A DNA stretch of 63,526 bases, the filler included, from Octopus bimaculoides (Eukaryota): the NCBI RefSeq assembly GCF_001194135.2. It is 7 parts of 5 records of this genome, joined end to end, with 100 filler letters (N's around TTAATTAATTAA, not from the genome) between each part and the next. Parts side by side here need not be neighbours in the genome. Positions count along the whole stretch, not along the records: positions 15,539 to 46,783 come from NC_068996.1; 6 more parts are not named here. One strand, given 5' to 3'. Each line of letters opens with the position of its first letter. Position 1 is the stretch's first letter. Positions 16,003 to 46,439 of this stretch are shown piece by piece. The translations under genes were made by a program, and so were the position numbers. Below the pieces are notes generated by a model that was not told where the DNA came from, ran no database searches, and saw nothing but the letters and a program-made list of their open reading frames with translations.

Positions 16003-16358
16003 GTGTGTGGTAAGTAAGTAGCTTGCTCACCAACAACATGGTTCCTGGTTCAGTCTCACTGCATGACACCTTGGGTAAGTGTCTTCTACTATAGCCTCGG
16101 GCCGACCAAAGCCTTGTGAGTGGATTTGGTAGACGGAAACTGAAAGAAGCCTATCGTATTGTATGTGTGTGTATATGTTTATTTGTCTGTGTTTGTCCCC
16201 CCAACATTGCTTGACAACTGATGCTGGTGTGTTTACATCCCCGTAACTTAGTGGTTCAGCAAAAGAGACCGACAGAATAAGTCCTAGGGTCGATTTGCTC
16301 GACTAAAGGCGGTGATCCAGCATGGCCACAGTCAAATGACTGAAACAAGTAAAAGAGT
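16003..16358 (+). mobile_element. tRNA-derived SINE, family A
   Basis: GTGTGGTAAGTAGCTTGC...GGTTCAGTC head, CCTTGGGTAAGTGTCTT, internal (GT)n; matches 62553-62974. Confidence 0.8.
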
Positions 16359-17453: not shown

Positions 17454-17762
17454 CTATGTAATATATAAAGTGTCTAGAACAAGAACATGATGGTTGTTTT
17501 TAGCAAGTGTAACTATATAACCTTCAGATGTTATATTGAGACCACAACAACGACTAACTTTGACATAAGGACACTCAAATTCTCCTATAAGAGACCCATC
17601 AGATTGGAATACAGCAACATGAAAGCGGTTACCATGACTGTCTCCAACCAAAACATCTCCAGCATCACTGATGTCAATTCCATTCGGGTAATTTGTGATA
17701 CTTTCACATCCAATACGTCTCAGAAACTGCCCTTCCTCATTGAATACAACAACACAGTGTCC
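17454..17762 (-). CDS. mei-P26: mei-P26-like terminal coding exon ([11 protein letters not shown]...LDTLYIT*)
   Basis: atttttAG acceptor, 309 nt, TAG stop at 17454-17456. Confidence 0.95.
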
Positions 17763-26486: not shown

Positions 26487-29400
26487 CACAAACAATACAG
26501 GCTTTCAGTCTGTGTACCAAATCCTTTTAAGGCTTTGGTCAGTCAAGAGCTACAGTAAAAAGAAACACTTGCCCCAAGTATTTAATCCTACACAGTGGGA
26601 CTAAACCTAAAAACCATACAGTTGAAAGCGAAGTTCTTATGGTCATGCCTATTTATTTTTATTTATGCATGTGATAGCATTAACTTTCAATTTCATAAAT
26701 ACACATATACATGTTATATATATATATTTCAAGTGGGAGTTGGAAAATCTGAAGATTTTAACAGAAAGCAAAATACCTCTATATCCCACAGAGTAGAGGA
26801 GTGATTTATTAATTTTGAAAGAGTTCAATATTAAAAAAGAAAATTGACAAGTTTTTGTGTCAATAGTAATCATCACAGGAGACTACAAAAAGGCTTATAA
26901 TTGTATAGGATAGAGTCTACTGTGACACCATCAGACAATACCTGCATGGAATTAAAAGTACAACACTAATTAAATTAAATTTTTCTATCCAGTTTTTAAA
27001 AATGTAATCAGTATTTCCTCACCACTAAGTTTTCTGAAATGAATCAGCTCAACTTAAAAGTTAAATCAACTTTTTTCACATTTCTGATTCCACTGTGAGC
27101 TCTAATAGTTTTCAAAATTCTGAATTGCTGAAGGAAACCTTTAAATTATATTGGGTATATCTGAATGAGCTGCACAGAAATGTGTCAGATTTTCTTTTCT
27201 TACAATAGCAGACTGGCTATTCAACCCCACTCCAAGATACAAGGAATGAGAAAGCAGAAATAGACATAAAATCATACTCCTTATACTCCCAAATGACAAT
27301 AAGTGTAGACCAAAGTTTTAAAGTAATCTTGGATTTTTGGTTACAAAAATACCTTTCTCGTCAGTAACCTACCCTCTGGAACTAAGTTGAGATGCACTTA
27401 ATTACCTTCCCAACATCATATTTAGTAAACTGAATTTCAGTGTTTTCCAAGCAGAGAAAGAAACTGATAATTATTTAACCTAGAGATTCAAGACAACTTA
27501 TTAGTTAGTGCCTTCCCACTTCATACTAAAAAGCCTATATCCCTCACTTAGTACACCCATTTCATTAAAAGTGTAAATAATGCAGATACAAATAAAATGT
27601 AAATATTTCCTTTCATATTGCTAAATAAATTGGTTTGCTATATATATATTGTTTTAAATTTGCAGCATACTTAATAAGGAAGATGGGTGTATACATCCTA
27701 TGTATAATTACAGAGTGGAATATGGTATTGGGAACATGGCCTGGGAGCTAAGAGCCAAGAAGTTGGGGAACTATTTGGCTGGGGGTGGGGCCGGATATTA
27801 AATCAAAGTTTTACTTTTGTTATTACAATATTAAAAAATTAACCCATGTATTTATTAATATTATGAATGCTAGAGTTAGTTCTGCTCGTAAAAACTGTTT
27901 CATGCACATTTAAAACTGAATTATTACCTGCAATACTTATTTCTAACTTAAATACTGAAAACAAAATCATAATACACATTATAATAAGCCAATTTAAAAA
28001 CAAATAATATAGGACCTTTGGGTCATTTGCATTCACCAGCTGAATGGAACCAAATGTTTTTCGGATGGCTTCAGTAAATACAACGTCATCTGTCTTGAAC
28101 TCAATACTTCTATTCAAATCTGGCTTAGGATTGTTGTTAAAAAGATATAGCATCTGATTGACAATGACTTTATGTAACATGAGTATTTGATAGCTGTTCC
28201 CATTTTTCATAACACGTTCTGCAAATTTACTTCCATCTTCTATCTTCTCAATTTTCTTCCCAACATTATGACACATTTCTATTATAGACATTTCTTGAGC
28301 AGCATGGATTTCTTCTAAATCCTTTAATAATTCATCCTAAAAAATATTAGAAATATGAAATTAAATATAATCAAAGGATATATTTCACTTTCAAATTTAA
28401 AACTAGACAAGAGAAATGGTGTAAGTTTTCAAAATTAATATCACATAGGCCTTCAATCCATAACACAGGTCTACGACCAAAACATTATTTTACATTTATT
28501 AGGTGAAATTGATCAATTTTTATCTGCTGATTTCAAAAATTGCAAAGAAATTACCCTATCACAGAGTTTCTTCACAAAATCGATCATTGCATTTTACCAT
28601 TATGTCAGAATTTGACTATTGTCTTTTATCATTACTATTAATTACCATAATAGACTATAACTGTATATCTAAAAGGTGTAATTTGGAAATATAAATATCT
28701 AGCAATGTTCAGGCCATTTCAGCTACACAAAAGTACCTGCATCACTGTAGCTACAGTCACTTACAAGCAGTGAGGAGAGAGACATGCTTTAAAAGGTCCT
28801 GTTGCTTAGGTTAAAGCGTTTTTTTTTTTTTTTTATCAGTTATTTCCTCATGCCTTTTTTTCAATTTATATATATACTACAAACATTGTTTCATTGTATA
28901 TGTTACATTTCAATGCTTCTTTAATATTATGTAAGCATTTAGATGGTAAATCAACATATACTGTAAAAAATGTCCACTTCCTTACAGATCTCCATATCAT
29001 TTGAAGCAAGGATGTCTTGTAGAAATGTGCAAGCAAGCCTGGGCAACTTTTGTTACATTCGTAGCAAGATAATGATTTAAAAAGCATCTGAGAAATATTA
29101 CCAAATTTGTCAAAAAATCTTGCTATGCCAACTTTGGTATAAAGGACCAAGATAAGAAGTGGGCTCCTCATAAAGCTTGTTCAATTTATGTTGAAGAAGA
29201 CAATGAACAAAATATACAAAGTTTTTTTCATTTTAGGATTCCAATGATTTATCCAGATCTCCCTTCTGCATTGCAACTTGTTGCCAATGGACCATACATT
29301 CCAGTCACATCACCACTAAGGAACCATGAAGACATACACTTGAGTTCTGAGTCAGAAGGCAGAAACAGCAATGATCATGAAGACTTCAATAGCAGTGAAG

Positions 29401-32400
29401 GTGAAGAACCTCAACTATTCAAGCAGTATGAATTAAATTNNNNNNNNNNNNNNNNNNNNNNNNNNNNNNNNNNNNNNNNNNNNNNNNNNNNNNNNNNNNN
29501 NNNNNNNNNNNNNNNNNNNNNNNNNNNNNNNNNNNNNNNNNNNNNNNNNNNNNNNNNNNNNNNNNNNNNNNNNNNNNNNNNNNNNNNNNNNNNNNNNNNN
29601 NNNNNNNNNNNNNNNNNNNNNNNNNNNNNNNNNNNNNNNNNNNNNNNNNNNNNNNNNNNNNNNNNNNNNNNNNNNNNNNNNNNNNNNNNNNNNNNNNNNN
29701 NNNNNNNNNNNNNNNNNNNNNNNNNNNNNNNNNNNNNNNNNNNNNNNNNNNNNNNNNNNNNNNNNNNNNNNNNNNNNNNNNNNNNNNNNNNNNNNNNNNN
29801 NNNNNNNNNNNNNNNNNNNNNNNNNNNNNNNNNNNNNNNNNNNNNNNNNNNNNNNNNNNNNNNNNNNNNNNNNNNNNNNNNNNNNNNNNNNNNNNNNNNN
29901 NNNNNNNNNNNNNNNNNNNNNNNNNNNNNNNNNNNNNNNNNNNNNNNNNNNNNNNNNNNNNNNNNNNNNNNNNNNNNNNNNNNNNNNNNNNNNNNNNNNN
30001 NNNNNNNNNNNNNNNNNNNNNNNNNNNNNNNNNNNNNNNNNNNNNNNNNNNNNNNNNNNNNNNNNNNNNNNNNNNNNNNNNNNNNNNNNNNNNNNNNNNN
30101 NNNNNNNNNNNNNNNNNNNNNNNNNNNNNNNNNNNNNNNNNNNNNNNNNNNNNNNNNNNNNNNNNNNNNNNNNNNNNNNNNNNNNNNNNNNNNNNNNNNN
30201 NNNNNNNNNNNNNNNNNNNNNNNNNNNNNNNNNNNNNNNNNNNNNNNNNNNNNNNNNNNNNNNNNNNNNNNNNNNNNNNNNNNNNNNNNNNNNNNNNNNN
30301 NNNNNNNNNNNNNNNNNNNNNNNNNNNNNNNNNNNNNNNNNNNNNNNNNNNNNNNNNNNNCATGGAGAGGGTCATAGCCCAACTAATTAGGGAGAGTCAG
30401 TTTAGATGAGATGCAGTTTGGGTTTGTGCCAGGGAAAAGCACCATTGATGCTATATTTCTGGTAAGACAGCTGCAGGAGAAATACCTAGCCAAAGATAAA
30501 CCTCTGTACTTGGCTTTACTGACATGGAGAAAGCCTTTGACAGGGCCCCCCGATCCCTTATCTGGTGGTCAATGAGGAAACTAGGGATAGATGAATAGTT
30601 AGTGAGAGCTGTGCGAGCCATGTACAGAGACGCTGTCAGTAAGGTGAGGGTTGGCAATGAGTACAGTGAAGAATTCCAGGTGGAGGTAGGGGTCCACCAA
30701 GGTTCGGTCCTCAGCCCACTCCTATTTATCAAAGTCCTCCAGGCGATAACAGAGGAATTCAAGACAGGATACCTCTGGGAGCTCCTCTATGCTGATGATC
30801 TTGCTCTAATTGCTGAGTCACTATCAGAACTCAAGAAGTTTCTTCAGGTGTGGAAGCAAGGATTAGAATCAAAGGGCCTTAGAATCAACCTAGCTAAAAC
30901 CAAAGCCCTAATAAGTAGGAAGGTAGACAAAACACAAATCCCTTCAGGTAGATGGCCCTGCTCAATCTGTAGAAAAGGCGTAGGTAGAAACTCAATAAGA
31001 TGTACCCAGTGTAAGCTATGGACACCTAGGAAGGCTAACTAGGAAGTTAGTCTTTGTATGTGGCAGATGCTCAGGAGCAATAAACACTGAAAATGTGCAG
31101 AAAACAACTTCTGCCACATTCCAGGGAGAAAAACTAGAAGTAATTGATAGCTTCCGTTACCTAGGTGACCAAGACAGTAGTGGGGGACAGTGAGCTGAAA
31201 GTGTAGTGGCTAGAATAAGAATAGCCTGGGCAAAGTTCAGAGTGCTCTTACCTCAGCTGGTGACAAAGGGTCTCCCTCTCAGAGTAAAAGGCAGACTGTA
31301 TGACGCATGTGTACGAACAGCCATGCTACATGGCAGTGAAACATGGACCATGACAGCTGAGAACATGCGTATGCTAGCAAGGAATGAAGCCAGTATGCTC
31401 CGATGGATGTGTAATGTCAGTGTGCATACTAGACAGAGTGTAAGTACCTTGAGAGAAAAGTTGGACCTAAGAAGCATCAGTTGTGGTGTGCAAGAGAGAC
31501 GATTGCACTGGTATGGTCATGTGGCGAGAATGAATGAGGATAGCTGTGTGNNNNNNNNNNNNNNNNNNNNNNNNNNNNNNNNNNNNNNNNNNNNNNNNNN
31601 NNNNNNNNNNNNNNNNNNNNNNNNNNNNNNNNNNNNNNNNNNNNNNNNNNNNNNNNNNNNNNNNNNNNNNNNNNNNNNNNNNNNNNNNNNNNNNNNNNNN
31701 NNNNNNNNNNNNNNNNNNNNNNNNNNNNNNNNNNNNNNNNNNNNNNNNNNNNNNNNNNNNNNNNNNNNNNNNNNNNNNNNNNNNNNNNNNNNNNNNNNNN
31801 NNNNNNNNNNNNNNNNNNNNNNNNNNNNNNNNNNNNNNNNNNNNNNNNNNNNNNNNNNNNNNNTATGCGTACCTTTCCTTCTTTGGACACAAAACTCTGC
31901 TTGCGAAGACCCATTGAGGCAAGTGAAATCGAAATCGAATCAAACCAAATTCGACGACTGGCACCCATGCCAACCTTCCTTCATTGAACACTAAACTCGG
32001 CTTGCGAAGACCTGTTGGGACAAGTGAGATTGAAACTGAACCAAATTCGATGACTGGTACCCATGCCAGTGGAGCACTAACAGCACTATCAGAGCGGGAT
32101 CACTGCCAGAGCAGCTATCTTGGCTTCCGTGCCGGTGGCACAGAAAACGTACCATTTGAGCGTGATCGTCACCAGCATCGCCTTATTGGCACATGAACAA
32201 AACATTCGAGTGAGGTTATTGCCAGTGCCGCTGGACTGACTCGTGTGCAGGTGGCACGTAAAAAACACCATTTGAGCGTGACCGTTGCCAGTCAAAGCAT
32301 CCAACCCATGCTAGCATGGAAAGCGGACGTTCAACGATGATGATGATTATATATATATACATATATACTTTTATTCTTTTGTGCATTTCAGCCCAAATGG

Positions 32401-35400
32401 TGTGGCCATGCTGTGGCACCCATTGTAATTATTTTTTTAATAGCCATTCTTATGTGATTGGCCTTTGGTGAAAGTGGGAGTTTACTATTACTGCCCTCCC
32501 TTGAGTTGCTTGCTGTGATGTACTTTCATCTGGGACCTTGGACAGCTAAAGGTCAAATTGTTTCTTGAAAACATCTACCCTTATTCTATGTAGATCCCAC
32601 AGATGTTCTGGCAAGATAGTAAATAGCCGTGGGCCTTTGAACAGTGCAGTGATATCCAGTTCATGAGCTGGCTAGCTCCCAATACCAAAGTTTGGTGCCA
32701 ACCCCTCCAAGATCTTCCATATGCATATCACTGCATACCTCTCCCATCTTCGATCCAGTGAGTAGAGTTGTAGCCTTTTCATTCTCTTCCAAACAGCTCT
32801 GCTGCTCTATTGATGCAATCTTCCTAGTGTAGCACCACTGAACTGCCTCAACTCCTGCTATTAATTTGTTAATGTGTCTGCAGACCATACATTGTTAGTT
32901 CTATTAAGTTATGGTACAAGAGAATCACTGGTGTCACTTTAACATTATGAATGAGCGTTGTATCAGTTGTAAAGTAGAGGTTCAGAGCATTTTTACCTCT
33001 TGTTGAGTGGAGCATTATTTGCTGGGTGGCACATAAAAGACACCATTTTCGAGCATGGCCGTTGCCAGTACCACCTGACTGGCCTTCGTGCGGGTGACAC
33101 GTAAAAGCACCCACTACACTCTGAGTGGTTGGCGTTAGGAAGGGCATCCAGCTGTAGAAACTCTGCCAAATTAGATTGGAGCCTGGTGTTGCCATCCGGT
33201 TTCACCAGTCCTCAGTCAAATCGTCCAACCCATGCTAGCATGGAAAGCAGACGTTAAACGATGATGATGATGATGATGATTAGGGAGGTTGAAGTCCCCT
33301 AGACATATATGATGGCTGTCATCTAGGTTGGTTAATATTTGAGTCCCCATAATCTGGAGTATCTGGTGGACAATATGTAGCACACATTACCTCTTCATCT
33401 GATTAATGTGTGCCACCAGAGTATCATCGACTGAGTTTGAGTGTCACAGCATTGGTGGGACATTACAAGGCCCGATATTCAGCAGGAATACCGATGTGAC
33501 ATTCAAGATGAGAGGTGACCACCCTGTTGTTTGCAACGGTCTTGAGTGCTGATACATGTTTCTCAGATTTAATGTCTTATAAAACAAGGTCTGCTACCTC
33601 TGTGCTATTTTCCAAAAAAGATAATGGTTCAGCAGCTGCTGTCTACACTGCATCTATATTCTTTTTCCTCTTAGGAGCATTGTGTGCACCATCCACATAT
33701 CTTCATGGTGGAGACATCGTATTTTGTAACCTGGTCATGTCCTTGGGGACAGGTCTTCCAAGCCGTGACATTAGCAAAATGAATACCACCCACACTGGAT
33801 TTGGGATGAGCAAATCTACAGCTTGTCACAAAATCTCCATGCCAATAAGTAACCTTTGCATAAACTTGCAGACTTTGTTTTTTTGTTTTTTTTTTAAAGA
33901 ACCTTTATCTTCTCAAGTTCCATTTCTTTTTCCACCTTGGGCCCACAGCCATCCTCAGCTTGCTTGTGCCTGCATCTTCATGTTTGGCTTCTTTGTTTCT
34001 CTTGATGAACTTTTGGTTTGCTGCTGTTCTCTTAGGGCACAAAGTTGGCCAGAGTGGTGATGTTTGTTGTGTTCCTACTGCACAGCAAGCCATATATGTA
34101 TATATCTATATATACACACACACACACACACACACGATGGACTTTCTTGTAGAAGACGACATGCGAGTGCTCAGCTTTTTTGCTAAACCTGCACAAATTT
34201 GTTTTATAGTGATCAAATGTTCATACCACACATTAGCTCTCTCTCTCTCTCTCTCAATCAAATCGACGTTGTCTGAACAAGTGCACTATTTACCGTGCAT
34301 CAGTGTCAAAGTGACCATACACACACATGCATATAGCATTTTTTGTTTCAATGATTAGACTGTGGCTATGCAGGGGCTCTGCCTTGAAGAATTTTAATCA
34401 AATGAATCAACTCCAGTACTTATTCTTTGAAGCCTGTTACTTATTCCATTGGTCTTTTGCTGAACCACAAAGTTACAAAGACATAAACACAATACTGGTT
34501 GTCAAGTGGCAGTGGAGAACAAACACGAACATAAAGACACACACACACATACATACATGTACACATAATTATACATACATATATGTATACATGCAAACAA
34601 ATTAAATAGAGAAATACAATTGACAATCTAACAAGAGCACACGGGACTTAGATTGTCTCAAATGCCCAGGAGGCTCTCTTGAGGTTGTAGATAGTTTCTG
34701 TTACCTAGGTGACCAAATTAGCAATGGTGGAGGATGCTCTGAAAGTATTGTTTCCAGAATAAGAATTGGGTGGTGGAAGTTCAGAGAGCTATTGCCTCTG
34801 TTGGCAACAAAAGGACTCTCTCTCAGAGTGAAAGGTAGACTATATGATGCTTGTGTACAAACAGTTATACTCCATGGTAGTGAGACAGGGCTCTGAATGC
34901 TGAGGACATGTAGACTGGAAAGAAACAAAGGTAGTATGCTCCGTTGGATGTGCAACATCAGTGCACATATTAGACAAAGTGCAAATGTATTGAAAGAAAA
35001 GTTGGGCATAAGAGGAATCAAATGTAGCAGGTAAGAGAGAAGACTATGTTGGTTTGGACATGTGATGCATATGAATGAAGTCAGCTGCATAAAGAAGTGC
35101 CAATCACTGAAAGTGGATGGTACCCATGGAAGAGGGAAACCCAGGAAGACATGGGATGAAGTGGTAAGGACTGATCTCAGAAAGTTGGACCTCACAAAGG
35201 AAATGACCATGGACCGAGATGTCTAGTGACATGAAGTTCTGGGCTCTAGAAGTGCTGTGCGCCCCACCCACACTTAAGAAAACTTCTCACACTATCTCAA
35301 CGAACCAAACTACATCTCTTTTCTTCCTCACATTCCGCTTCATGTACTGTGAATACCTCCTACTCCCCAATCTTGTCCTCTTGGCCCAGTGCCACTGTAT

Positions 35401-38400
35401 CATTGCTCTCTGCTTGCCCCTAACCTGTGTTCTACCCACATTCCGTCTCATTCTATTATTGCCATCCTAACCCCCGACCTGTGTGTTCCACCCACATATA
35501 ACAAGAAAACTTTTCCTTCACCCTACCCCAACAAACCAATCAACATCTCTTCTTTCTCGCATTTCCTCCTTCATTCACGATGCCTAGCTTTCACTCCCCA
35601 ATCATGTCTTCACAGCCCTGTTCCTCTGTATCATTGCTATCTGGTAGCCCCTCCAACTCTATATATACCCAGGTCTTTTGCGACTCATTCGCACTCCCTT
35701 TGCAATATCCTGTCACTTATATTATGGCATTTGAACTTCAAGGGTATGCCCTGGCACTTGCCACCATCTATATCTCTCTCTTCTTTTACTCAAACATCCC
35801 ATTTATATTCTGATCCCAGTCTCTTGTGAGTATGCCTAGCATTCTGCCACCATCTCCATCCTGCAGCCTCCTACTCTCTCTCTCTCTCCTGCACTTCCGT
35901 CAGGTTGGGCAACTGTGTATTTTCTTTGTGGTAGCACACCTGTTTCTATCTTCATTCCTGATCTTTTTCTCTCCAGCAAGGTAACCTTGTACTTCCTCTA
36001 CAGCAAGACACCTGTATCTGCCAAACTATAACCTTTTCATCATCACCTCCTGCCCTCTTAAGTGTTTTCGTTTTGCAAGTACTTGGTGACCCTGTCAGTG
36101 CAGGTGCCACTTAAAAGCACCCAGTCCACACTGTAAAGTGGTAGGTGTTAGGAAGGACATCCGGCTGTAAAAACCTTGCCAAAACTGACCTCACCTGTGC
36201 TTGTGCCACATAAAAAGCACTAAATCCACTCTGCTGAGTAGCTGGTGTTAGGAAGGGCATCCAGCCAAAACAGTTACAGAAGTCAGTGCAGGCTTTGGCC
36301 TGGTTGGCTCTTGCAGTACCATCCCACCCATGCTAGCGTGGAACACAGATGTTAAATGATGTAGATAAAACATTAAAAAATTATTAAAAAAACCCAAAAA
36401 GCCAACAATTTGTTTCAAATTATACATGCTTACTCCCTGTTTTTCACACAACTCATTCCAACATAGATGGTTCTCCGACACCCAGTTATGCACTGCTAAG
36501 CTAAGATTTTCTCTCGTTTTTCTATCTTTTCACTTATTCATTCGCATTAATGATTTAATATGTATTATTTACTAATATCTACTTTCATAAGCTAATTATT
36601 TAAATTGACTCTTCAATATATAACTTCCTAATTTCTCTGTCTCAGCCTTCGTTTCTCCTTAATTCTTCATGTAATCTCTCCTTCCCACCTGTTTTCTCAA
36701 GTTGGCTACATATTTTTTGTACCACCTCTCTAAATTAATCCTTGCTTGTCTGCGGTGCGCTTGTCCATTCCCACCCCCCACCATCACCAATACCTGATAT
36801 CTCTCTTCTCCCACCACCATTACCGGATATCTCTCTCTTCTCCCACTGGAAACCCCCTCCCTCACTGGTGGTATCCTCTATTCATACCTGCAATTTCCTC
36901 CTCCTCTCTCTCCTGCCCACCTACTTAATCGACTATCTTTCGTTTTGACTCAAAATTTGTCAGCAAATTACTCGGTAATTTCCATGGACATATCGAAGTG
37001 GAAAGAGAAAGCTAATGGATTGTATGTGCATGCTTGTTGCTCTCTTCACTTACTGGAAGCCCCCTCCCTCACTGGTGGCATCCTTTATCATACCTGCAAT
37101 TTCCTCTTCCTCTCTCCCCCAGGACAAATGCAACTAGTTTAGCTGCCCACCTACTTAATCTAACATTGGCATATTGATATTCATATTCTCTTTTATCTAT
37201 CTTTATTTATTTATTTACTTATAACTGCAACACCAGTAATCCTTAAATTTACGATGTCCATAATGCTTATACTTAAAACGCCGCTAACACCTACGCCTAC
37301 CCCCAGTAGGGGTAACAATCTTAACACGCCGGAATGTTTGAATGATGAGAAGTCTACAGGTGTAGCATGTCTGTCAAACGAACACATAAACCTTCTTCTT
37401 TTCAGGCACTGAATAACATCTCCCTTCTCCATGCCTCCTCCCACATTCCTTTCTCAGTTTTTAGAGTTGGTACTGTCAATGTAGGCACACTGAAAGGTAG
37501 GTCTAGTGAGATTGTAGAGATGCTTGAATAGAGACATGTTGATGTATGCTGCATACAAAAGGTAAGATGGAGAGGAGCTTCAGCCAGGGTCCTCACAGGC
37601 AAGGCACATAGGTATAAAATATTCTAGGAAGGTAACAGTGATGGAGTGTTGGCATACTCCTTGCGGAGAAATGGGTGGATAAGGTCACAGAGGTTGTCAG
37701 GGTATGCTATAGAGTGCTTAAGCTCAGGCTGGTCCTGCAGAATAGTATAGCTACAATTATCTCTGCCTATGCCCCACATGAGGGCATAGTAAACAATCAG
37801 AAGGACCACTTTTATGATACCCTTCTATGGGCTACCTCAAAGATGAGTGGCAATGACCTCATCTTTGCAGCTGGAGATTTTAATGGTCATGTTGGACAGC
37901 AATCCAGTATCTTCCATGGTGTTCACAGGGACCATGGAATCATTTCTCGAAATGAAAGAACTAGGCTACTGGAGTTCTGTGATGCATGTAACCTATTAAT
38001 CTGCAACAGTAACTTCAAGAAGCCAGACAGCCACCTGATAACCTATCAATCAGGTGACTCTGCTAGCCAGATTGATTTCATCCTCATCAGAAAGTGAGAT
38101 GCAAGTTCGCTCTTAAATACAAAGACCCTCCCTGGTGAAGAAAGTACCCCCAGCATAGACTAGTTATTAGTAACTTTAGACTCGAGGCCAGATGGATGCC
38201 AAGAAGCAGACCAATCCAGAAAAGAACGATTTGGAAGCTAAAGAATCCTTCACATGGTCAGAAATTTAGGGACATCCTCATTGAGAAATTTGATAAGAGG
38301 GAGGGGAAGCTACAGTAGAGCAACGTGGTGATGGAATAACACGGTAGATAGGGCCATTAAGAAACAGGCCTGGAAAATCTGGAAGAGTGGGGGTAGCAGG

Positions 38401-40230
38401 GAACTGTACCAGATAGCCAGAAGGGAGGCTGGGAGACAGATATACATAGCCAAGGGAAAAGCAGAAAAGAAGTTTACTAATGTTCAGTGATGTGAGGACC
38501 AAACAACTGAAGTATTTTGGATTGCAAGACTGTGTGAGAGAAAATTGTGATGTTACAGGAGAGAAATGTGTCTGCATGAATGATGGTGCACTTGCTTTTA
38601 ATGATTCTGCAAAGAAAGAGGCTTGGAGAAGCCATTATGAAGGGCTGCTGAATGTGGAGAATGAATGGGAGGAGGAGAGCCTGCCAAATGTGGACCCAGT
38701 AGAGGAACCAGGTACCCGAATAGATAGCACCCTGGAAGATAAAGTAATTAAGGATATGAAGTCAGGAAAACCTCTGGCCCATCAGGAACCACTGCTGAGA
38801 GGCTTAAAATATCTGGTGGTGTGGGTTATGGTCTAGTCACCTGTATTATAAACCAGGTAGTTCACGAAGGAGTCATACCCAATGATTGGCATAGCAGCAC
38901 CATAGTCAACTGCTACAAAGGTAAAGGTGATGCTTTAGATAGAAATAACCACAGGGTTATCAAACTGCGGGATCAGGTGATAAAGGTCACGGAGAGGGTC
39001 ATAGCCCAACTAATTAGGGACAGAGTCCACTTAGATGAGATGCAGTTTGGTTTTGTGTCAGGGAGAAGTACCACTGATGCTATATTACTGGTAAGGCAAC
39101 TGCAAGAGAAATACCTAGACAAAGATAAACTTTGAGTCTAAAGTTACTAATAACTAATCTATGCTGGGGGGGGTACGTTCTTCACCAGGGAGAGTCTTTG
39201 TATCTGAGAGCAACCTTGCATCCCGCTGACTGGTGAGGATGAAATCAATCTGGCTAGCAGTCACCTGATTGATAGGTTATCAAGTGGCTGTCTGGCTTCC
39301 TGAAGTTGGTGTTGCAGGTTAATACATTGCATGCATCACAGAACTTCAGTAGCCTATTTGGCTTTTGTTGATTTGGAGAAAGCCTTTGACAGGGTCCCCC
39401 GATCACTTATCTGGTGGGCGATGCGGAAACTGGGGATTTACAAGTGGCTAATAAGAGCTGTACAGGGATGCCATTAGTAAGGTAGAAGAATTCCAGGTAG
39501 AAGTAGGGGTTCACCAAGGAACAGCTCTCAGCCCCCTCTTATTCATCATAGTCTTCCAGGCAATAACAGAGGAATTCAAGACAGGTTGCCCCAGGAGTTC
39601 CTCTATGCTCATGACCTTGCTCTCATAGCAGAATCACTACCAGAACTAGAGAAGACATTTCAAGTGTGGAAGCAAGGTTCAGAATCGAAGGGCCTTAGAT
39701 TCAATGTTGCAAAAACCAAAGTCCTAGAAAGTAGGAAGGCAAACACATCACACACCCCTTCAGGTAGATGGTCCTGCTCAATCTGTAGGAAACTCCATAA
39801 GATGTACCAAGTGTAAGCTATGGACACATAAGGTGCAGCAACATCAAAGGAAAACAGATTCCATCACATGCCAGGGGGAGGAACTAGAAGTAGTTGATAG
39901 CTTCCGCTACCTAGGTGACCAAGTCTGTAGTCGAGGTGGATGCTCGGAGAGCGTTGCCACTAGAATAAGAATAGCCTGGGCAAAGTTCAGAAAGCTCCTA
40001 CCTCTACTGGTGAATAATGTATATAAGTTGAAACAAATTGTTGGCTTTTTTGAGTTAATCAATAATTTTTTGTTGTCTTATTTATAGTATATTATAATAT
40101 AAATAAATTGTTAGATTGTCAATTGTATTTATACCCCTATTTCTGTGATATTCAACTGACATACCAGTGAATTGGGTGTTTTACACCCCACTGATGGAAT
40201 TTTTTCCTTCGTTTGTTACATTGTATGTAT

Positions 40231-40309
<79 letters not shown>

Positions 40310-41558
40310 AACACACACACATATGAAGTCTGCTTAAAAAGTATCAGAACTGGTGCCATAAAAAGAAAACTACAACATATCAATTCAGCCTGCAATCTCC
40401 TTCAAAGTAGCACCCTTCTGAAACCACAGTTTCCATTGTTGGAAGCATTCCTGGAACTCTTTGTTTGGCATAGCAAGCAGCTGCCATGGCACATTCTTTT
40501 GGATTTCCTCAACATCTTGAAATGTTTCTGGGAGTCATCCATTGCAAAGACAGAGTCTTGATTTCAGAGTCATTACTATACACCCATCATTCATCACTTG
40601 TGATCACCATTTTCGAAAGGATTATGTCTTTCTCAGCACACCTGAGGAGATCCTGCACATCTGAAACATGATCTTTTTTCAGACCACCACACGCTACACC
40701 AGTGGTTCCCAAACTTTTTAGAGACACGACCCACTATTTATGACACCAGTTTATGGCGACCCACTTAACTCTACTGGGTAAAAACATTAATGAAAGAAAC
40801 AAATTTATTTCAGATTACATTTTCATTGAGGCGTTTTTTATAACTGTTTCAACGTCTCCATACCCTATGGGCAGGTATTAACTCTAATACAAAACCTCGA
40901 AGTAGTAACTGTTATTGGCTCGATCAGTGCTGTACTGCGCCTAGTTAAAGTTCTCTATAAATAGGTAAAAACAGACTTTTCCTTTTTACGATTACGTACG
41001 AATAAATAACTTGAGAAAATGACCACCTCTGATTTGTTAAGTTCGTGAAAAAAGCCTACTGCTTGATAAAACAACCAGTCTGGTATTGAAAACATGNNNN
41101 NNNNNNNNNNNNNNNNNNNNNNNNNNNNNNNNNNNNNNNNNNNNNNNNNNNNNNNNNNNNNNNNNNNNNNNNNNNNNNNNNNNNNNNNNNNNNNNNNNNN
41201 NNNNNNNNNNNNNNNNNNNNNNNNNNNNNNNNNNNNNNNNNNNNNNNNNNNNNNNNNNNNNNNNNNNNNNNNNNNNNNNNNNNNNNNNNNNNNNNNNNNN
41301 NNNNNNNNNNNNNNNNNNNNNNNNNNNNNNNNNNNNNNNNNNNNNNNNNNNNNNNNNNNNNNNNNNNNNNNNNNNNNNNNNNNNNNNNNNNNNNNNNNNN
41401 NNNNNNNNNNNNNNNNNNNNNNNNNNNNNNNNNNNNNNNNNNNNNNNNNNNNNNNNNNNNNNNNNNNNNNNNNNNNNNNNNNNNNNNNNNNNNNNNNNNN
41501 NNNNNNNNNNNNNNNNNNNNNNNNNNNNNNNNNNNNNNNNNNNNNNNNNNNNNNNNNN

Positions 41559-41614
<56 letters not shown>

Positions 41615-44600
41615 TACATAAATATAAATTGGCTGCAAGTGAAGCTACCTAATGCAATGGAGAAGTGACACCTCTCATGTGCTCTTTTGTATTCTCACTG
41701 TTGTTTCTCCCCAACAGCATGAATTACAAGATTCAGTAACTAGTGCCATTCCTCATGCTGCAGGATCTCCTCCTTCCAGTGTCTGAGGAAATGCTGAAGT
41801 TCATATATCTCCCTCAGTACATCCCTATATCGCAACTTCTGGCCACCCTGGCTCTGCCTGCCCTGATACAGTTCAGCATAAAAGCTACCTGCAAACATGT
41901 CCCACCCAACACAGCTACAATGAGGTAATGAGGCCCTTACAGTGTGAAGATCATGTCCATGGCCTGAAGCTATATTGACTGTTGAAATCGGCTCTGATGA
42001 TTTTCAGTCAATTGAGAATGATTTTTGCTAGCACCTTGCCAGCTATGGCCAACAGATGATTCCCACATTCTGCTCAATCTCACTTCCGTTTTGTAAATAT
42101 ATGTACAAGTAGTCTACCTAACCAAAAACGTTTATAGTCAACTTATTACAAGCTAAGCTTTCTTCTACTGCTTACCAATTCTCTGAATCTCTTCAGTCAT
42201 CCACATATTACTGATGTCTTCAGTTTTCCAAAAGTAATAAAACATGAAGTCAACCCCAAAAATCAATAGATTACGTGCTTGCCCACTTGAAATTTATAAA
42301 GCAATAAAAACTATTTTTTGAATATCAAATATGAAACTGAATAGACCAATCCCACTAAAAGATAAATATCAATCATCATATAATCTGCTTTAACTAGTTA
42401 ACTTCTGCATTACACATCAGTTGAAAATTGCTTAAAGTAAAAATACTTACCCTTCTGTTTTCTAAAGCAGTTTTGTAACTTTGGAACGTTTCTTGAACAA
42501 GTCCTTTAACATTATCTCGTTGCATCTGCATATCAGTTAAAGCATTTTCAAGATTGTTACTAGTTTCTTCAAAAAGCTTTATTTTATTCTTACTCTCTGT
42601 TACCAGATTGTTAATCTCATCAGAAAACTTTGTGTCAACATTAGAAATTTTTTCAGTAAAATGCTCTGGTTGCTGGTGATCTTCAGCAATGCAGTCATTG
42701 CAAACCACTTCCTGCAATATAATATTTTTCACATTGAAACATACAAGAAATTAACCATAACCAACCCAATTCACTTTTGTAACAACCAAAAGAAACATAT
42801 CCATCGCAAGCAGTTAAAGACATAGTGAGTATAAGACCTACAGACATTGTAGGGATCAAAGTAAATAGAAACTGACACTTGCTAAACTATTAAACCCATA
42901 CCCAGCATAGATAACAGATTAAAGAACAGAATTTGGATTTAGGTAGATTGAGATCCCTAAAGTTAATATCAAACTGTACCATCATTCAGTCCAGTTATCT
43001 GATGCATCTCAAATACAGAATATTCAACTTGCATTTTATTGGTGTGAAGAGTGGAAAGGTAAAGTAGAAAGTTAACAGCCAACTTAATAATTAAATACTT
43101 GTAAATCATATTTAGCTAGACCCACTGCACTGTATTTGAAGCTGATAACTTCCTTGTTTGTAAAGCTGATTTCTTACTATTTATTTCAGCATGAAGTTTT
43201 AGTTCAATTGGCATAAATTATTAGAGTGCTAGACAAAATGATTTGCAGCACTTTTACAGACTATTTAGATTCCTGGTTCAAATTCTGTCATGGTCAACTT
43301 TACTTCCTTGGGGCTCAAAAACCATACCTGTTTGAATACACTGCCATTTGTAATGCTTTATTAATGCCAACAAATCACACAATCACTTCAAAATCAGACT
43401 CATTACAGAGCAAAGCAAACAAGTTTTTATCCAATTAAATTGGCTTGTTGAAGGCACAGCAAAGACCATAGCAAGATCTCTACTATGAACATTACTAAAT
43501 AGACTTCATAAAAAAAGTGACACTTGAAAAATACATATCTAATTCCTTTTATGACTTTACAATCTATTGTTCCTATTTTTATGAGAAAAGCATGTTCAAA
43601 AGGAAATTGTCAAATTATCATTGCAACTAACCTTACAATAAGACAATAGATCTTTTTAGAACCATCCCACATTTATACACAATTCAAAAAGAAACTGATA
43701 AAACGAAATAGTAAAATATTAAAATACTGAATATACAGTTAAGTTAGCAATCGAGTCACTTGTTAATTCTTAACCACATAACCGAGTCTGTGTTTACATG
43801 CATATATCTTTTTAGACTCCACATGTCAGAACAACTAGGTTCAGCATTAAGATTTGTTAAAAATCTTACTAACATTGTACTGTAGCAGAATAATGTTATG
43901 TTTAATTTTGTTTCAAATGTTCTCTCCTAAGTCTGCATCTTCAGCACTATCCATGTGAACTTTACATCATCTCAAGAATTATATGCTTCAGAAAAATATC
44001 ATTAGAAATATGTATTATGTATTTCATGGTTCTTTACGAACATCCAACAATCTTAAGTTTCCAAAATAACATTGAGATTTTCACTGGTAAATACAGAAAT
44101 TAGCAAGGTTGTTGTTTACTTGCCAGATCTGGAATAGGGATAATGCCCATGGCCTGCAGAAGCCCTCTGCAACCAATGAGAGTGATGTCAATGGTTCATC
44201 TTGAACCATAAGTCAACACTCATGTGAAAGACATGAGCAGTGGAAGAATTCCAGAGAATCAATGTCCTGGGAAGGAAGAGCTGGGCAGAGATTTGTGCAG
44301 AGCCTGAGAAGATGTTAACAATAAGGATGATAAGAGGGAGACAAATGTGCTGGGAATGCTTGAGAGAAAGTGAAATGAGCTCAATCAGCTTGAAGGTACA
44401 GAAATTATTACTGTAACGGGGAAAAAGCAGAGAGAGAAGACAGCATGCTTGTGGTCAAAGGCTAGTTGAGTAGCCTTTTGTGGATGCAGTCTAGGAAAAA
44501 AAGGCCATTAAATCAGTGCAAGTAGTTTTAAGAAGAAATAAACTGTAGCATGAACAATTTCACAAAAAGTTGAAGTATAAATCTTTCAAGAACTGTTTTA

Positions 44601-44860
44601 CTAAATTAAAAATTGTCAATAAAGCTAAAACAAGGCCTCATTGAGAGAAGGAGAATATGATGTGAAATGGCTTCAACAAAAAATTAAAACAATGTTTACA
44701 TTCAAAAAGTTTCATCTCTGCCCATAAAACATAAATTCATTGTTCTTACCTGACATGAAAGACAAAAATATTTTACATTTTCACTTGGATGAATCCGACA
44801 AAACATTGGCTTCAGAAATTTAGGTCCATCTCCATTTTGCATATCTTCAAATGATATAAC
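17454..44860 (-). CDS. mei-P26: TRIM-NHL protein, Mei-P26/NHL-2 subfamily; 10 coding exons, 5' incomplete (no start, RING or B-box 1 found)
   Basis: Exons 44750-44860, 42451-42711, 28016-28336, 25402-25759, 24289-24603, 22609-22717, 20616-20776, 20335-20523, 17957-18108 and 17454-17762 have GT-AG ends, matching phases, and join without stops (2286 nt). NHL motifs [59 protein letters not shown] and [14 protein letters not shown] match Mei-P26/NHL-2 as I recall them, not Brat. Confidence 0.9.
17957..18108 (-). CDS. mei-P26: mei-P26-like NHL exon ([13 protein letters not shown]...VCDFK)
   Basis: tatttAG acceptor, AAG|GTAATT donor, 152 nt, phase 1-0. Confidence 0.95.
20335..20523 (-). CDS. mei-P26: mei-P26-like NHL exon ([14 protein letters not shown]...AITQQ)
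   Basis: cttccAG acceptor, G|GTAAAA donor, 189 nt, phase 1-1. Confidence 0.95.
20616..20776 (-). CDS. mei-P26: mei-P26-like NHL exon ([19 protein letters not shown]...QFGIP)
   Basis: Poly-T ctgtAG acceptor, G|GTATAG donor, phase 2-1; classic NHL repeat. Confidence 0.95.
20885..22320 (-). mobile_element. Highly decayed RTE/RTEX-like LINE fragment in an intron
   Basis: [14 protein letters not shown] (endonuclease end) and [16 protein letters not shown]...TALQLLPK; many stops. Confidence 0.5.
22609..22717 (-). CDS. mei-P26: mei-P26-like exon leading into NHL domain (SISNTSS...NKMSPMQIR)
   Basis: ctctttctAG acceptor, AG|GTAAGT donor, 109 nt, phase 1-2. Confidence 0.88.
22797..23000 (-). mobile_element. 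tRNA-derived SINE, family B (left member of an inverted pair)
   Basis: Reverse complement gives the GTGAGCTGACAGAATT head, GAGTTCAAATTC B-box and ...TTTGAAACC tail. Confidence 0.7.
23087..23301 (+). mobile_element. tRNA-derived SINE, family B, with 19-bp target-site duplication
   Basis: AATATTAAAGTATAATGGT at 23068-23086 and 23302-23320 flanks the copy. Confidence 0.85.
24289..24603 (-). CDS. mei-P26: mei-P26-like exon, Asn/Ser/Thr/Leu low-complexity linker
   Basis: atgtctAG acceptor, weak G|GTCTGT donor, 315 nt, phase 1-1. Confidence 0.82.
25402..25759 (-). CDS. mei-P26: mei-P26-like exon, Ser/Pro-rich linker (IENPISS...DSGISVD...KLGR)
   Basis: ctttacAG acceptor, G|GTAAGC donor, 358 nt, phase 0-1, open frame. 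Confidence 0.88.
28016..28336 (-). CDS. mei-P26: mei-P26-like exon, coiled coil ([11 protein letters not shown]...VNANDPK)
   Basis: ttttttAG acceptor and in-frame continuation of the helix. The donor AAG|GTCCTA is weak but is the phase-0 site the next exon needs. Confidence 0.85.
28743..29419 (+). mobile_element. 5' fragment of a CMC/Chapaev-like DNA transposase
   Basis: ATG at 29012, then [33 protein letters not shown]...PYIPV and [12 protein letters not shown]; runs into a gap. Superfamily label is from memory. Confidence 0.55.
30361..32348 (+). mobile_element. RTE-clade LINE (RT domain, 3' UTR, (GAT)n tail), gapped and decayed
   Basis: [49 protein letters not shown] and RLHWYGHV; tail ...GTTCAACGATGATGATGAT. 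Confidence 0.92.
32400..34060 (-). mobile_element. CR1-like LINE with large internal deletion and a nested insertion
   Basis: Endonuclease remnants (LGDFNLP; [11 protein letters not shown]...HNLIELTM) join directly to 3' ORF2 remnants ([17 protein letters not shown]). Confidence 0.65.
33000..33281 (+). mobile_element. 5'-truncated RTE 3' end or RTE-tailed SINE nested in the CR1
   Basis: AGGAAGGGCATCCAGCTGTAGAAA...CATGCTAGCATGGAAAGC...(GAT)n, shared with 32300-32348 and 36100-36361. Confidence 0.75.
34635..36361 (+). mobile_element. 5'-truncated RTE LINE (thumb/C-terminus plus long 3' UTR)
   Basis: [30 protein letters not shown] and [11 protein letters not shown]; ends GTTAAATGATG. Confidence 0.85.
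37230..40014 (+). mobile_element. RTE LINE, 5' end through RT, 3'-truncated, with an internal inverted segment
   Basis: [24 protein letters not shown] and SQIDFIL (APE endonuclease); [17 protein letters not shown] and EKAFDR; many stops. Confidence 0.92.
40322..40699 (+). mobile_element. Mariner-derived non-autonomous fragment
   Basis: TA-TGAAGTCTGCTTAAAAAGTATC resembles a mariner TIR; antisense transposase remnants. Confidence 0.45.
40700..41096 (+). mobile_element. hAT (Charlie-like) non-autonomous element, running into a gap
   Basis: Starts CAGTGGTTCCCAAACT, a typical Charlie-type TIR. Confidence 0.5.
42451..42711 (-). CDS. mei-P26: mei-P26-like exon, end of B-box 2 and start of coiled coil ([17 protein letters not shown]...ALENRR)
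   Basis: attgcAG acceptor, AGG|GTAAGT donor, 261 nt, phase 0-0. Confidence 0.92.
44750..44860 (-). CDS. mei-P26: mei-P26-like exon, first half of B-box 2 ([37 protein letters not shown])
   Basis: Acceptor ttttttaAG, donor CAG|GTAAGA, 111 nt, phase 0-0. C-x2-H and C-x2-C ligands continue in the next exon. Too short for the ORF track. Confidence 0.9.
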
Positions 44861-44958
44861 CTTAAAAAAGAAAAGAATTAAATAAACTGCCCAATTTCTT
44901 CTCAGATTCCAACGAAAAATTTGCTCATATTATATTAATATTTAAGGTCACAAATTTA

Positions 44959-45564
44959 CTGAAAATGGTGATAATGGATAGCAGATCCATAGGATGAATA
45001 CGTTCAAGTACGTCTTGCAGTTGTGGCACCCATGCTAGATGGTTCATGTCTGCTAACAATATATGTCTGTGCTCTTAGCATTGTGCATTTGTATGATAGG
45101 CTCTCACAGTATTTAGCATTCTAATAATGCATCAACATTGGAGTAGGATATAAAGATTGCCATTTAGTATTAATACTTCTGTCATATTTATTTTTTACAT
45201 TTTATGTTCAAATCTTCCTAAGTCTGCATTGCTTTTCATACTTGTGGTAATTGACTGGTGTTTATTTCATCAAAACCACAAGTATGAAAGGCAATGCTAA
45301 CTTCGGAAGATTTGAACATAAAATATAAAAAATAAATATGACAGAAGCAGTATTAATACTAAATAGCAATCTTTATATCCTACTCCAATGTTGATGCATT
45401 ATTAGAATGCTAAATACTGTGAGAGCCTATCATACAAATGCATAATGCTAAGAGCACAGATATATATTGTTAGCAGACATGAACCATCTGGCGTGGGTGC
45501 CACAACTGCAAGACGTACTTGAACATATTCATCCAATGGATCTATCCAGCATCACCATTTTCAG
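44959..45564. repeat. Long inverted repeat: 290-bp arms, 26-nt loop, intronic
   Basis: 44959-45248 versus the reverse complement of 45275-45564: about 14 substitutions and two 3-nt indels; 77-bp perfect core. Confidence 0.97.
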
Positions 45565-46439
45565 GTTAGTAATGATAATTTCTAGATAAAATTCTGCCAT
45601 CTATATTGTTTCATTATCTAATAACAGGATAAAAAGATTGTGACTCTGGTTAATGCATGAGAGGACATCAACATATGTTTTATGTATATGTCTAAATTTG
45701 TTATGCCCATCAACTGAAGAGAAATGAGCATGACTATAAAATGATTAATATGTTGAAGGAATATCAATCATTTCTTTAACTTTGACCAAGCTTATGAATT
45801 TGCACAGAATATTTAAGGTATGTTATTTATATGCTTCTATATTATATGAATACAGTATATACGCTGCAGCTGTTAGGTGCAGGTATGGTAATCGATGCAA
45901 ATAGGCTATGTGGTTAAGCAAGTTCATATCCGAAGCACATGGTTCTGGGTTCAGTCCCACTGCATTGTACTTTGCATAAATCTTCTAATAAACCTGGGCC
46001 TTGTGAGAAGATTTGATGGACAGAAACTGAAAGAAACCTCTCATGTGATGGTTCTAAAATGAGTGTTAACATCATAAAAGCAGTGTCTTTTGTTTCCAAT
46101 CTTCCATGAATACATCTGGCCATGGAGAAGCATTACCATTTTTGGAAACAGGCAAGGGTTAGCAATGGAAAGTAGATAACATTTACCATATTATAATGTA
46201 CAATACAGTATCACCACCTGTCTTATAGGGTGCATTATTAATGTACATAATGTAAAACAGCCTGTGCACTACCTATAGCATAATATCACTAATATCACTA
46301 CCAACAAATTCTAAGTACTCAAGTTATAAAACAAGGGTTATCAACAGAAAACAACTGTTTACATCAAAGACTTCTTCAGTAGAATAAAGGTTTTCTTTTG
46401 ATTTACATTTTTTTCCTGTTTGGTGTGCGTGTGTGTGTA

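What the first reader, a model, noticed from the sequence alone, without database searches (positions are those of the whole stretch)
44959..45564. Near-perfect 290-bp intronic hairpin 97 nt upstream of the B-box 2 exon acceptor
Seen: 290-nt arms, a 26-nt loop, ~14 substitutions, two 3-nt indels and a 77-bp perfect core. In the minus-strand transcript about five differences give A-C mismatches and about five give G-U pairs. The centre is a decayed family B SINE read through the loop, suggesting fold-back duplication. The neighbouring exon is 111 nt, phase 0-0. Established: long duplexes are ADAR and Dicer substrates, coleoid cephalopods edit heavily, and Mei-P26/NHL-2 act in small-RNA pathways. 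Inference: it may drive hyper-editing, alter splicing of this exon, or yield hairpin siRNAs, possibly autoregulatory.
Basis: partly seen in the sequence, partly recalled or inferred. Interest (0 to 1): 0.72.

Follow-up and report, generated by a model that had tools for sequence, protein, structure and literature searches.

The report
Young intronic inverted repeat, likely neutral
A real 606-base near-perfect hairpin sits in an intron of a cephalopod Mei-P26-like gene, but it looks like an ordinary young inverted duplication or palindromic repeat with no sign of conservation or selected function.

Summary
The arms are 44959-45248 and 45275-45564, 290 nt each, with a 26-nt loop, 14 substitutions, two 3-nt indels and a 77-nt perfect run. 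In the minus-strand transcript the differences give 5 G·U, 5 A·C and 4 other mismatches. The RNA folds at -462 kcal/mol (z = -52). The hairpin lies 98 nt upstream of a 111-nt phase 0-0 exon (44750-44860). That exon encodes the first half of B-box 2 of a Mei-P26-like TRIM-NHL gene.

- No similarity to either SINE family in the piece could be shown.
- No second copy of the arm was found anywhere I could search.
- There is no clean target-site duplication.
- The same intron in Sepia pharaonis has no counterpart.
- The 5:5 split of G·U to A·C and the spread of the differences fit neutral decay.
- A published survey finds no endo-siRNA pathway or siRNA-type Dicer/Ago in molluscs.

The substitutions are rich in transitions and concentrated at CpG sites, which argues against an assembly artefact.

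Best reading: a lineage-specific, roughly 5%-diverged inverted duplication. An in-situ fold-back is slightly favoured over a palindromic MITE-like insertion. It is transcribed passively, probably hyper-edited by ADAR, and degraded with the intron. Interest is low.

The parts
44959..45248 (.). Left arm of the inverted repeat (290 nt). In the minus-strand pre-mRNA this is the 3' arm, the one nearest the exon.
   Evidence: 95% identity to the reverse complement of the right arm.
45249..45274 (.). 26-nt spacer (loop). Its ends TTGA/TCAA pair, leaving an unpaired loop of about 13 nt.
45275..45564 (.). Right arm of the inverted repeat (290 nt). In the pre-mRNA this is the 5' arm.
44861..44958 (-). 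98 nt of intron between the hairpin base and the exon. It carries the polypyrimidine tract (ttatttaattcttttcttttttaag) and lies outside the helix.
44750..44860 (-). 111-nt phase 0-0 exon encoding [37 protein letters not shown], the N-terminal half of B-box 2. The orthologous Sepia exon, read from the sequence as about L004 9172-9282, is also 111 nt.
42451..42711 (-). Next exon, 261 nt: the rest of B-box 2 and the start of the coiled coil. The junction with the exon above is confirmed by the spliced mRNA orthologue L003/P0134.

Best explanation
The element is a genuine, evolutionarily young, lineage-specific inverted duplication of about 290 bp of intron sequence. It was probably made in place by a fold-back (template-switch) replication or repair error, and its arms have since drifted apart neutrally to about 5%. 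It has no dedicated function. It is transcribed as part of the Mei-P26-like pre-mRNA and folds into a dsRNA of about 290 bp. That dsRNA is expected to be promiscuously A-to-I edited by nuclear ADAR and then removed and degraded with the intron, leaving the 3' splice site (98 nt away, outside the helix) usable.

Shown: the structure, its reality as diverged sequence, its position, its lack of conservation, and the lack of bias towards RNA pairing.

Inferred: the fold-back origin, transcription-coupled folding, and ADAR editing.
For: - Structure and thermodynamics.
- Real divergence rather than artefact. There are 10 transitions to 4 transversions. Three of the four CpG sites differ between the arms. 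The indels are 3 nt. The nearest assembly gap is more than 3 kb away.
- Single copy in everything searchable. There is no other copy in the 31-kb piece or in four related cephalopod loci. Arm ORFs find no relatives among 5.8 billion clusters or 1.84 billion representatives, only spurious tandem-repeat proteins. Two 23-mers have no match in metagenome contigs.
- No target-site duplication of 2, 3, 8 or 9 bp. The flanks are ...CACAAATTTA | GTTAGTAATG....
- Neutral pattern. G·U to A·C is 5:5 in the transcript (binomial P = 1). The perfect run is not exceptional (P = 0.11). Inner versus outer substitution density is not significantly different.
- Not conserved. The orthologous Sepia pharaonis intron (L004 1087-9167) has no homologue and no hairpin near the acceptor.
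- Young. Arm divergence is 4.9% (K2P 5.1%). A congener-like species (Logan contigs L001/L002) differs by about 14% over 1.66 kb of another part of the gene, intron plus one exon.
- ADAR expectation: PMC9989829.
Against: - Origin cannot be settled without the source genome or a close orthologue.
- The sharp outer boundaries, the 606-bp size and the AT-richness also fit a palindromic MITE.
- A 4-bp flank pair TTTA/GTTA (3 of 4 matching) and a 'TA' on the left side leave a short-TSD transposon possible.
- My negative copy-number evidence is weak, because the source genome and most cephalopod genomes were not searchable as DNA.
- Gene conversion between the arms could make the element older than it looks.
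- No expression or editing data were available.
Confidence: 0.45

Rival explanations
1. It is an insertion of a palindromic non-autonomous DNA transposon (MITE-like or foldback-type, essentially two long terminal inverted repeats around a 26-nt remnant). Once inserted it is equally passive.
For: - Its size is 606 bp, its GC is 34.5%, the inverted repeat spans the full length, and both outer boundaries are abrupt.
- TIR transposons, especially Tc1-mariner, are diverse in octopus genomes, and MITE families are annotated there (PMC13282606).
- 'TA' precedes the left end, and the 4-bp flanks TTTA/GTTA match at 3 of 4 positions.
- Repeat families in inverted pairs occur in the Sepia version of the same intron.
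Against: - There is no clean TSD of any standard length.
- The termini CTGAAAA...TTTTCAG do not resemble the Tc1/mariner, hAT, piggyBac, PIF or CACTA ends known to me (own knowledge).
- No second copy appears in 31 kb of the same genome, in the related loci, or through ORF searches.
Confidence: 0.3
2. It is a selected cis-regulatory dsRNA. Either it acts as an ADAR-recruiting 'editing inducer element' that raises editing of the neighbouring B-box 2 exon, or it is a structural modulator of that exon's inclusion.
For: - A long intronic stem lies 98 nt from an exon.
- In mammals such stems raise editing at nearby sites (PMC3479170, PMC5654063).
- Skipping the 111-nt exon would keep the reading frame.
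Against: - The exon and its flanks have no local structure above shuffles (z = -0.01).
- There is no excess of G·U over A·C.
- There is no counterpart in Sepia, although the exon is conserved at 111 nt.
- The splice signals lie outside the helix.
- The spliced orthologue mRNAs include the exon.
Confidence: 0.07
3. It is an hpRNA-type locus that Dicer processes into endo-siRNAs, possibly autoregulating the small-RNA-pathway gene that hosts it.
For: - Its geometry resembles Drosophila hpRNAs (hundreds of bp of stem; PMC12553114).
- The host gene is Mei-P26-like.
Against: - Molluscs lack siRNA-type Dicer and Ago and show no endo-siRNA signature in about 2.3 billion small-RNA reads, O. bimaculoides included (PMC12479628).
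- The arms have no similarity to any exon of the host gene or its mRNA, so siRNAs would target only the intron itself.
- Rfam miRNA hits at the loop are far below threshold: 39 bits against 100, and 35 against 72.
Confidence: 0.03
4. It is an assembly artefact: a fold-back contig or a gap-closing error.
For: The piece comes from a scaffolded assembly with N gaps. A 77-bp perfect palindromic core is hard for de Bruijn assemblers.
Against: - The arms differ by 14 substitutions with a 10:4 transition bias and CpG-site decay, plus two indels. Fold-back artefacts are identical copies.
- There is no gap within 3 kb of the element.
Confidence: 0.05
5. It consists of two independent insertions of the same short interspersed element, landed head-to-head or tail-to-tail 26 nt apart (an IRAlu-like pair).
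For: - The arm length of 290 nt is SINE-sized, and the piece is full of SINEs.
- There is a faint 28-nt match between outer arm 45013-45038 and the tail of a SINE at 36308-36336.
Against: - The arm has no significant similarity to the SINE families present.
- There is no tRNA-like head, and no A-rich or microsatellite tail at either end.
- There are no per-arm target-site duplications.
- The arm is not found elsewhere.
Confidence: 0.05

Closest known systems
Inverted repeat pairs in introns that form long dsRNA and are hyper-edited by ADAR (e.g. inverted Alu pairs in primates; young-repeat dsRNA across metazoans, PMC9989829)
   Same: It is an intramolecular, near-perfect dsRNA several hundred bp long, embedded in a pre-mRNA intron. 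It is young, lineage-specific and shows no selection. It is expected to be a promiscuous ADAR substrate.
   Different: The arms are not recognisable copies of a dispersed repeat family. The spacer is only 26 nt. The arms are much more alike (95%) than typical independent repeat copies.
Palindromic MITEs / foldback-type non-autonomous DNA transposons
   Same: It is about 600 bp, AT-rich, an inverted repeat along its whole length, with sharp ends.
   Different: No target-site duplication and no other copy were detected. The termini match no superfamily consensus.
Drosophila hpRNA loci (hp-CG4068, hp-CG18854 and similar) that yield endo-siRNAs through Dcr-2/AGO2
   Same: It is a long hairpin made by inverted duplication, with a stem of comparable length.
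   Different: The required siRNA machinery is reported absent in molluscs (PMC12479628). The arms are not derived from any detectable target gene. The element is intronic rather than an independent transcription unit.
Editing inducer elements (the long intronic hairpin of Gabra3; PMC3479170, PMC5654063)
   Same: It is a long intronic stem within about 100-150 nt of an exon.
   Different: There is no adjacent short editing-site stem and no conservation. Editing is untested.

Membership tests
MITE / TIR DNA transposon | Terminal inverted repeats | tested here: met
   Arms of 290 nt at 95% identity reach both ends of the element.
MITE / TIR DNA transposon | Target-site duplication directly flanking the termini | tested here: not met
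   The flanks are CACAAATTTA | GTTAGTAATG. There is no 2-, 3-, 8- or 9-bp direct repeat, only a 3-of-4 match TTTA/GTTA, which is not meaningful in AT-rich DNA.
MITE / TIR DNA transposon | Multiple dispersed copies in the genome | tested here: inconclusive
   No other copy was found in the 31-kb piece, in loci L001-L004, through ORF-based protein searches, or with two 23-mer metagenome scans. The source genome itself could not be searched.
   nhmmer, relaxed blastn and a SINE profile gave no hit. Smith-Waterman against 7 copies gave only two faint matches (1-3 of 200 shuffles reached the observed score, over 14 tests). Of these, the match to the abundant SINE tail lies in the outer arm, not the centre. 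The other, inner-arm match to the 45937-46042 copy is 30 nt of A-rich sequence.
   ARAGORN finds nothing. There is no A-rich or microsatellite tail at either arm end.
hpRNA / endo-siRNA locus | Long, nearly perfect hairpin transcript | tested here: met
   for the predicted fold. Transcription is inferred from the intronic position.
hpRNA / endo-siRNA locus | Arms homologous to a target gene | tested here: not met
   No match to the host-gene exons, to the mRNA orthologue L003, or to anything else available.
hpRNA / endo-siRNA locus | Dicer-dependent 21-23-nt phased small RNAs, with siRNA-class Dicer and Ago present in the lineage | not testable with these tools
   There are no small-RNA data here. 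The literature reports no siDicer, siAgo or endo-siRNAs in molluscs (PMC12479628).
Editing inducer element | Long intronic stem close to an edited exon | tested here: inconclusive
   The stem lies 98 nt from the exon. Editing of the exon is unknown.
Editing inducer element | Separate short stem holding the selectively edited site | tested here: not met
   The exon plus flanks folds no better than shuffles, z = -0.01.
Editing inducer element | Evolutionary conservation of the stem | tested here: not met
   It is absent from the orthologous Sepia pharaonis intron. Closer species were not available.
miRNA / mirtron precursor | Match to a curated family at its gathering score | tested here: not met
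   The best hits are MIR6445 at 39 bits against 100 and mir-513 at 35 against 72. No hit reaches gathering score anywhere in the piece.

The most novel reading that the evidence does not exclude
The hairpin is an ADAR-recruiting 'editing inducer' that a heavily editing cephalopod has co-opted. It would raise recoding of, or modulate inclusion of, the adjacent in-frame B-box 2 exon of a Mei-P26-like translational regulator. That would be a lineage-specific structural switch born from a recent fold-back duplication.
Probability: 0.05. Interest if true: 0.5.

Novelty: new member of a known kind. Interest (0 to 1): 0.15.

Why it matters
If the ordinary reading is right, the locus matters only as a clean, datable example of how long intronic dsRNA arises in a cephalopod gene, and as a convenient positive control for hyper-editing pipelines. 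It would become interesting only if RNA data showed that the hairpin changes editing or inclusion of the neighbouring B-box 2 exon. Nothing in the sequence points that way.

Tried and rejected
I tested it with blastn (word sizes 9 and 7), nhmmer with the arm as a single-sequence query, an nhmmer profile of four copies of the abundant SINE family, and shuffled Smith-Waterman against 7 SINE copies. Nothing was significant. The MAFFT alignment with the second SINE family was forced and unconvincing.
- Orthologous genomic contigs from the closest species in Logan (SRR11869391/4). Only the coiled-coil exon region was retrievable (L001/L002). Searching with ORFs of the hairpin and of the B-box 2 exon returned only a spliced mRNA from a more distant cephalopod.
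- SRA accession numbers searched in the literature to name those species: no hits.
- Two 23-mer scans of JGI metagenome contigs: no hits.
- An arm ORF searched against 1.84 billion representative proteins. The three hits are tandem-repeat or TPR-like proteins matched through many weak stretches, not homologues.
- Rfam: only sub-threshold generic miRNA-hairpin matches centred on the loop.
- Extending the inverted repeat into the flanks, or finding TSDs of 2-9 bp: none.
- Non-uniform spread of the differences (perfect core, loop-proximal excess): not significant (P = 0.11; P = 0.14).

Full report
**What is there**

Reading 44700-45900 and running the inverted-repeat finder show one large palindrome. 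A gapped global alignment of 44959-45248 against the reverse complement of 45275-45564 gives two 290-nt arms and a 26-nt spacer. The 646-nt minus-strand RNA folds into a single helix of -461.9 kcal/mol, against -137 ± 6 for dinucleotide shuffles (z = -52). As DNA it folds at -301.9 kcal/mol. The ends of the spacer (TTGA/TCAA) also pair, so the open loop is about 13 nt.

**Context**

The piece carries a TRIM-NHL gene on the minus strand.
- Stop-to-stop ORFs, Pfam and tblastn of full-length cephalopod orthologues map the exons at 44750-44860, 42451-42711, about 28019-28336, about 25406-25765, about 24290-24604, about 22578-22679, 20614-20778, 20318-20530, 17957-18148 and 17457-17780.
- The NHL domain matches Drosophila Mei-P26 (PDB 7nyq) at E = 1.7e-69, far better than TRIM71, TRIM2/3 or Brat. 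The 'Mei-P26-like' label is therefore justified.
- The closest named protein is from the cuttlefish Acanthosepion (Sepia) pharaonis. The variable regions are only 57-72% identical to two decapodiform orthologues.
- The two SINE families in the piece look to me like the abundant octopus SINEs (my own recollection, not tested). The source is therefore a cephalopod, probably an octopod.
- The exon next to the hairpin is 111 nt. It is bounded by AG (44862-44861) and GT (44749-44748), is phase 0-0, and encodes the first half of B-box 2.
- Its junction to the next exon is confirmed by a spliced Logan mRNA (L003/P0134). Read from the sequence, the Sepia exon (about L004 9172-9282) is also 111 nt.
- Ninety-eight intronic nucleotides, including the polypyrimidine tract, separate the hairpin from the exon and stay outside the helix.
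- The upstream exon (RING plus B-box 1) is beyond the end of the piece.

**Is it real?**

The piece comes from a gapped scaffold (N runs at 29440-30360, 31551-31863 and 41097-41558), but none lies within 3 kb of the hairpin. More telling, the arms differ in the way old DNA differs. There are 10 transitions to 4 transversions. Three of the four CpG positions differ between the arms. There are two small indels. Fold-back assembly artefacts produce identical arms. I put an artefact at about 5%.

**What is it made of?**

I could not reproduce this.
- blastn with word sizes 9 and 7 and nhmmer with the arm, run against the rest of the piece, found only AT-rich noise.
- An nhmmer profile of four copies of the abundant SINE found nothing, even without filters.
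- Smith-Waterman scores against seven SINE copies sit within the shuffle distribution, with two faint local matches. One is 28 nt in the OUTER arm (45013-45038 against the SINE tail at 36308-36336). The other is 30 nt of A-rich sequence.
- ARAGORN sees no tRNA-like head, and there is no tail or tandem repeat.

The arm is also not found anywhere else I could look.
- Related loci L001-L004: no match.
- Proteins predicted from public assemblies, queried with the arm ORFs: no match. The three representative-library hits are tandem-repeat proteins, not homologues.
- JGI metagenome contigs, queried with two 23-mers: no match.

The flanks (…CACAAATTTA | GTTAGTAATG…) show no target-site duplication of a standard length, and the inverted repeat does not extend into them.

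**Origin**

Two mechanisms fit: an in-situ fold-back (template-switch) inverted duplication of intron sequence, or insertion of a palindromic MITE-like element.
- The missing TSD, the apparent single-copy status, and termini unlike the common superfamilies tilt me towards the fold-back (about 0.45 against 0.30).
- The copy-number evidence is weak, because the source genome could not be searched as DNA.
- TIR transposons and MITEs are well represented in octopus genomes (PMC13282606).
- Two independent head-to-head insertions of one SINE are unlikely, given no family similarity, no tails and no per-arm TSDs.

**Age**

Arm divergence is 4.9% (K2P 5.1%). Logan contigs from a closely related species (98% amino-acid identity in the coiled-coil exon) are 85.9% identical to the window over 1.66 kb of intron plus exon. 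If there has been no gene conversion between the arms, the hairpin is younger than that species split. It should be missing, or present as one arm only, in that relative. This is a direct test that I could not run, because the contig for this part of the gene was not retrievable.

**Is there any sign of function?**

None that I could find.
- If the minus-strand RNA helix were under selection, transitions should be biased towards G·U. They split 5:5.
- The 77-nt perfect core is within expectation for 16 events on 293 columns (P = 0.11). The loop-proximal excess of substitutions is not significant (P = 0.14).
- The orthologous 8.1-kb intron of Sepia pharaonis (L004 1087-9167) has no homologue of the arm and no hairpin near the acceptor. 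It has its own unrelated repeat pairs 1.6-3.8 kb upstream. So long inverted repeats in this intron are commonplace and interchangeable.
- The splice signals are not sequestered.
- The exon region has no structure above background (z = -0.01). This removes the short editing-site stem that an editing-inducer arrangement needs (PMC3479170, PMC5654063).
- The arms match no exon of the host gene or its mRNA, so 'autoregulatory' small RNAs would have no mature target.
- A clade-wide survey reports that molluscs, O. bimaculoides included, lack siRNA-class Dicer and Ago and show no endo-siRNA signature. It suggests that editing, rather than dicing, deals with repeat dsRNA (PMC12479628).
- Rfam gives only sub-threshold generic hairpin matches at the loop.

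**What it most likely does**

It is transcribed passively with the intron and folds into about 290 bp of dsRNA. It then becomes one of the very many young-repeat dsRNAs that ADAR edits promiscuously in metazoans, octopus included (PMC9989829), and is discarded with the lariat. It is also generic, and it is untested here.

**Verdict**

The SINE centre, the siRNA and autoregulation ideas, and any regulatory role are unsupported or contradicted. The element is a new instance of a well-known kind, and interest is low (0.15). The most novel reading still open is an ADAR-recruiting element that modulates the B-box 2 exon. I rate it at about 5%.

Noticed in passing
window 37642-40084 (+) and 30393-31039 (+): There are two copies of the same non-LTR retrotransposon. 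ORFs with an endonuclease-like N-terminus (recognised by eye; no Pfam hit) and a reverse transcriptase (Pfam RVT_1) are present. The RT regions are 81-93% identical in blocks. The second copy abuts assembly gaps at 29440-30360 and 31551-31863.
   Followed up: partly
window 37959-38151 and 39169-39359: A second long inverted repeat lies in the piece (about 190-nt arms, 88-90% complementary, about 1 kb apart), inside the retrotransposon. The finding's hairpin is therefore not the only long inverted repeat in this gene's introns.
   Followed up: no
window 19060-19330, 32090-32370, 33000-33290, 36075-36390; and 16033-16155, 25862-25972, 45937-46042: At least two SINE families populate the introns. 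One contains GGCATCCAGCTG...CCCATGCTAGCATGG and a (GAT)n-type tail. The other has a tRNA-like GGTTC.GGTTCAGTC head and ends GCCTTGTGAGTGGATTTGGTAGACGGAAACTGAAAGAAGCC. One copy of the second family lies about 370 nt from the hairpin but is not part of it.
   Followed up: partly
L004 27448-28356: About 8 kb downstream of the Sepia pharaonis orthologue there is a second B-box 2 plus coiled-coil coding segment (64-73% identical, with one short 23-aa stretch at 100%). This suggests a tandem TRIM-NHL paralogue or a partial duplicate.
   Followed up: no
L004 5383-5613 / 6418-6648 / 7039-7139 / 7498-7587: The orthologous Sepia intron holds its own family of repeats in inverted pairs (231-nt arms at 85%). 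They are unrelated in sequence to the window's hairpin.
   Followed up: partly
L003 about 880-915: The Logan mRNA contig L003 is frameshifted within B-box 2 relative to its cluster-mate P0134 (912 aa, intact). This is probably a contig error, not biology.
   Followed up: partly
window 40208-40330 and 41559-41630: Long (TA)n/(CA)n microsatellites flank the assembly gap at 41097-41558. The gap probably reflects unassemblable simple repeat.
   Followed up: no
protein searches: No annotated octopus protein appeared among the listed hits for this gene, although the window looks octopod. Either the gene is missing or fragmented in the public octopus annotations, or those proteins are absent from the indexed collection.
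   Followed up: no
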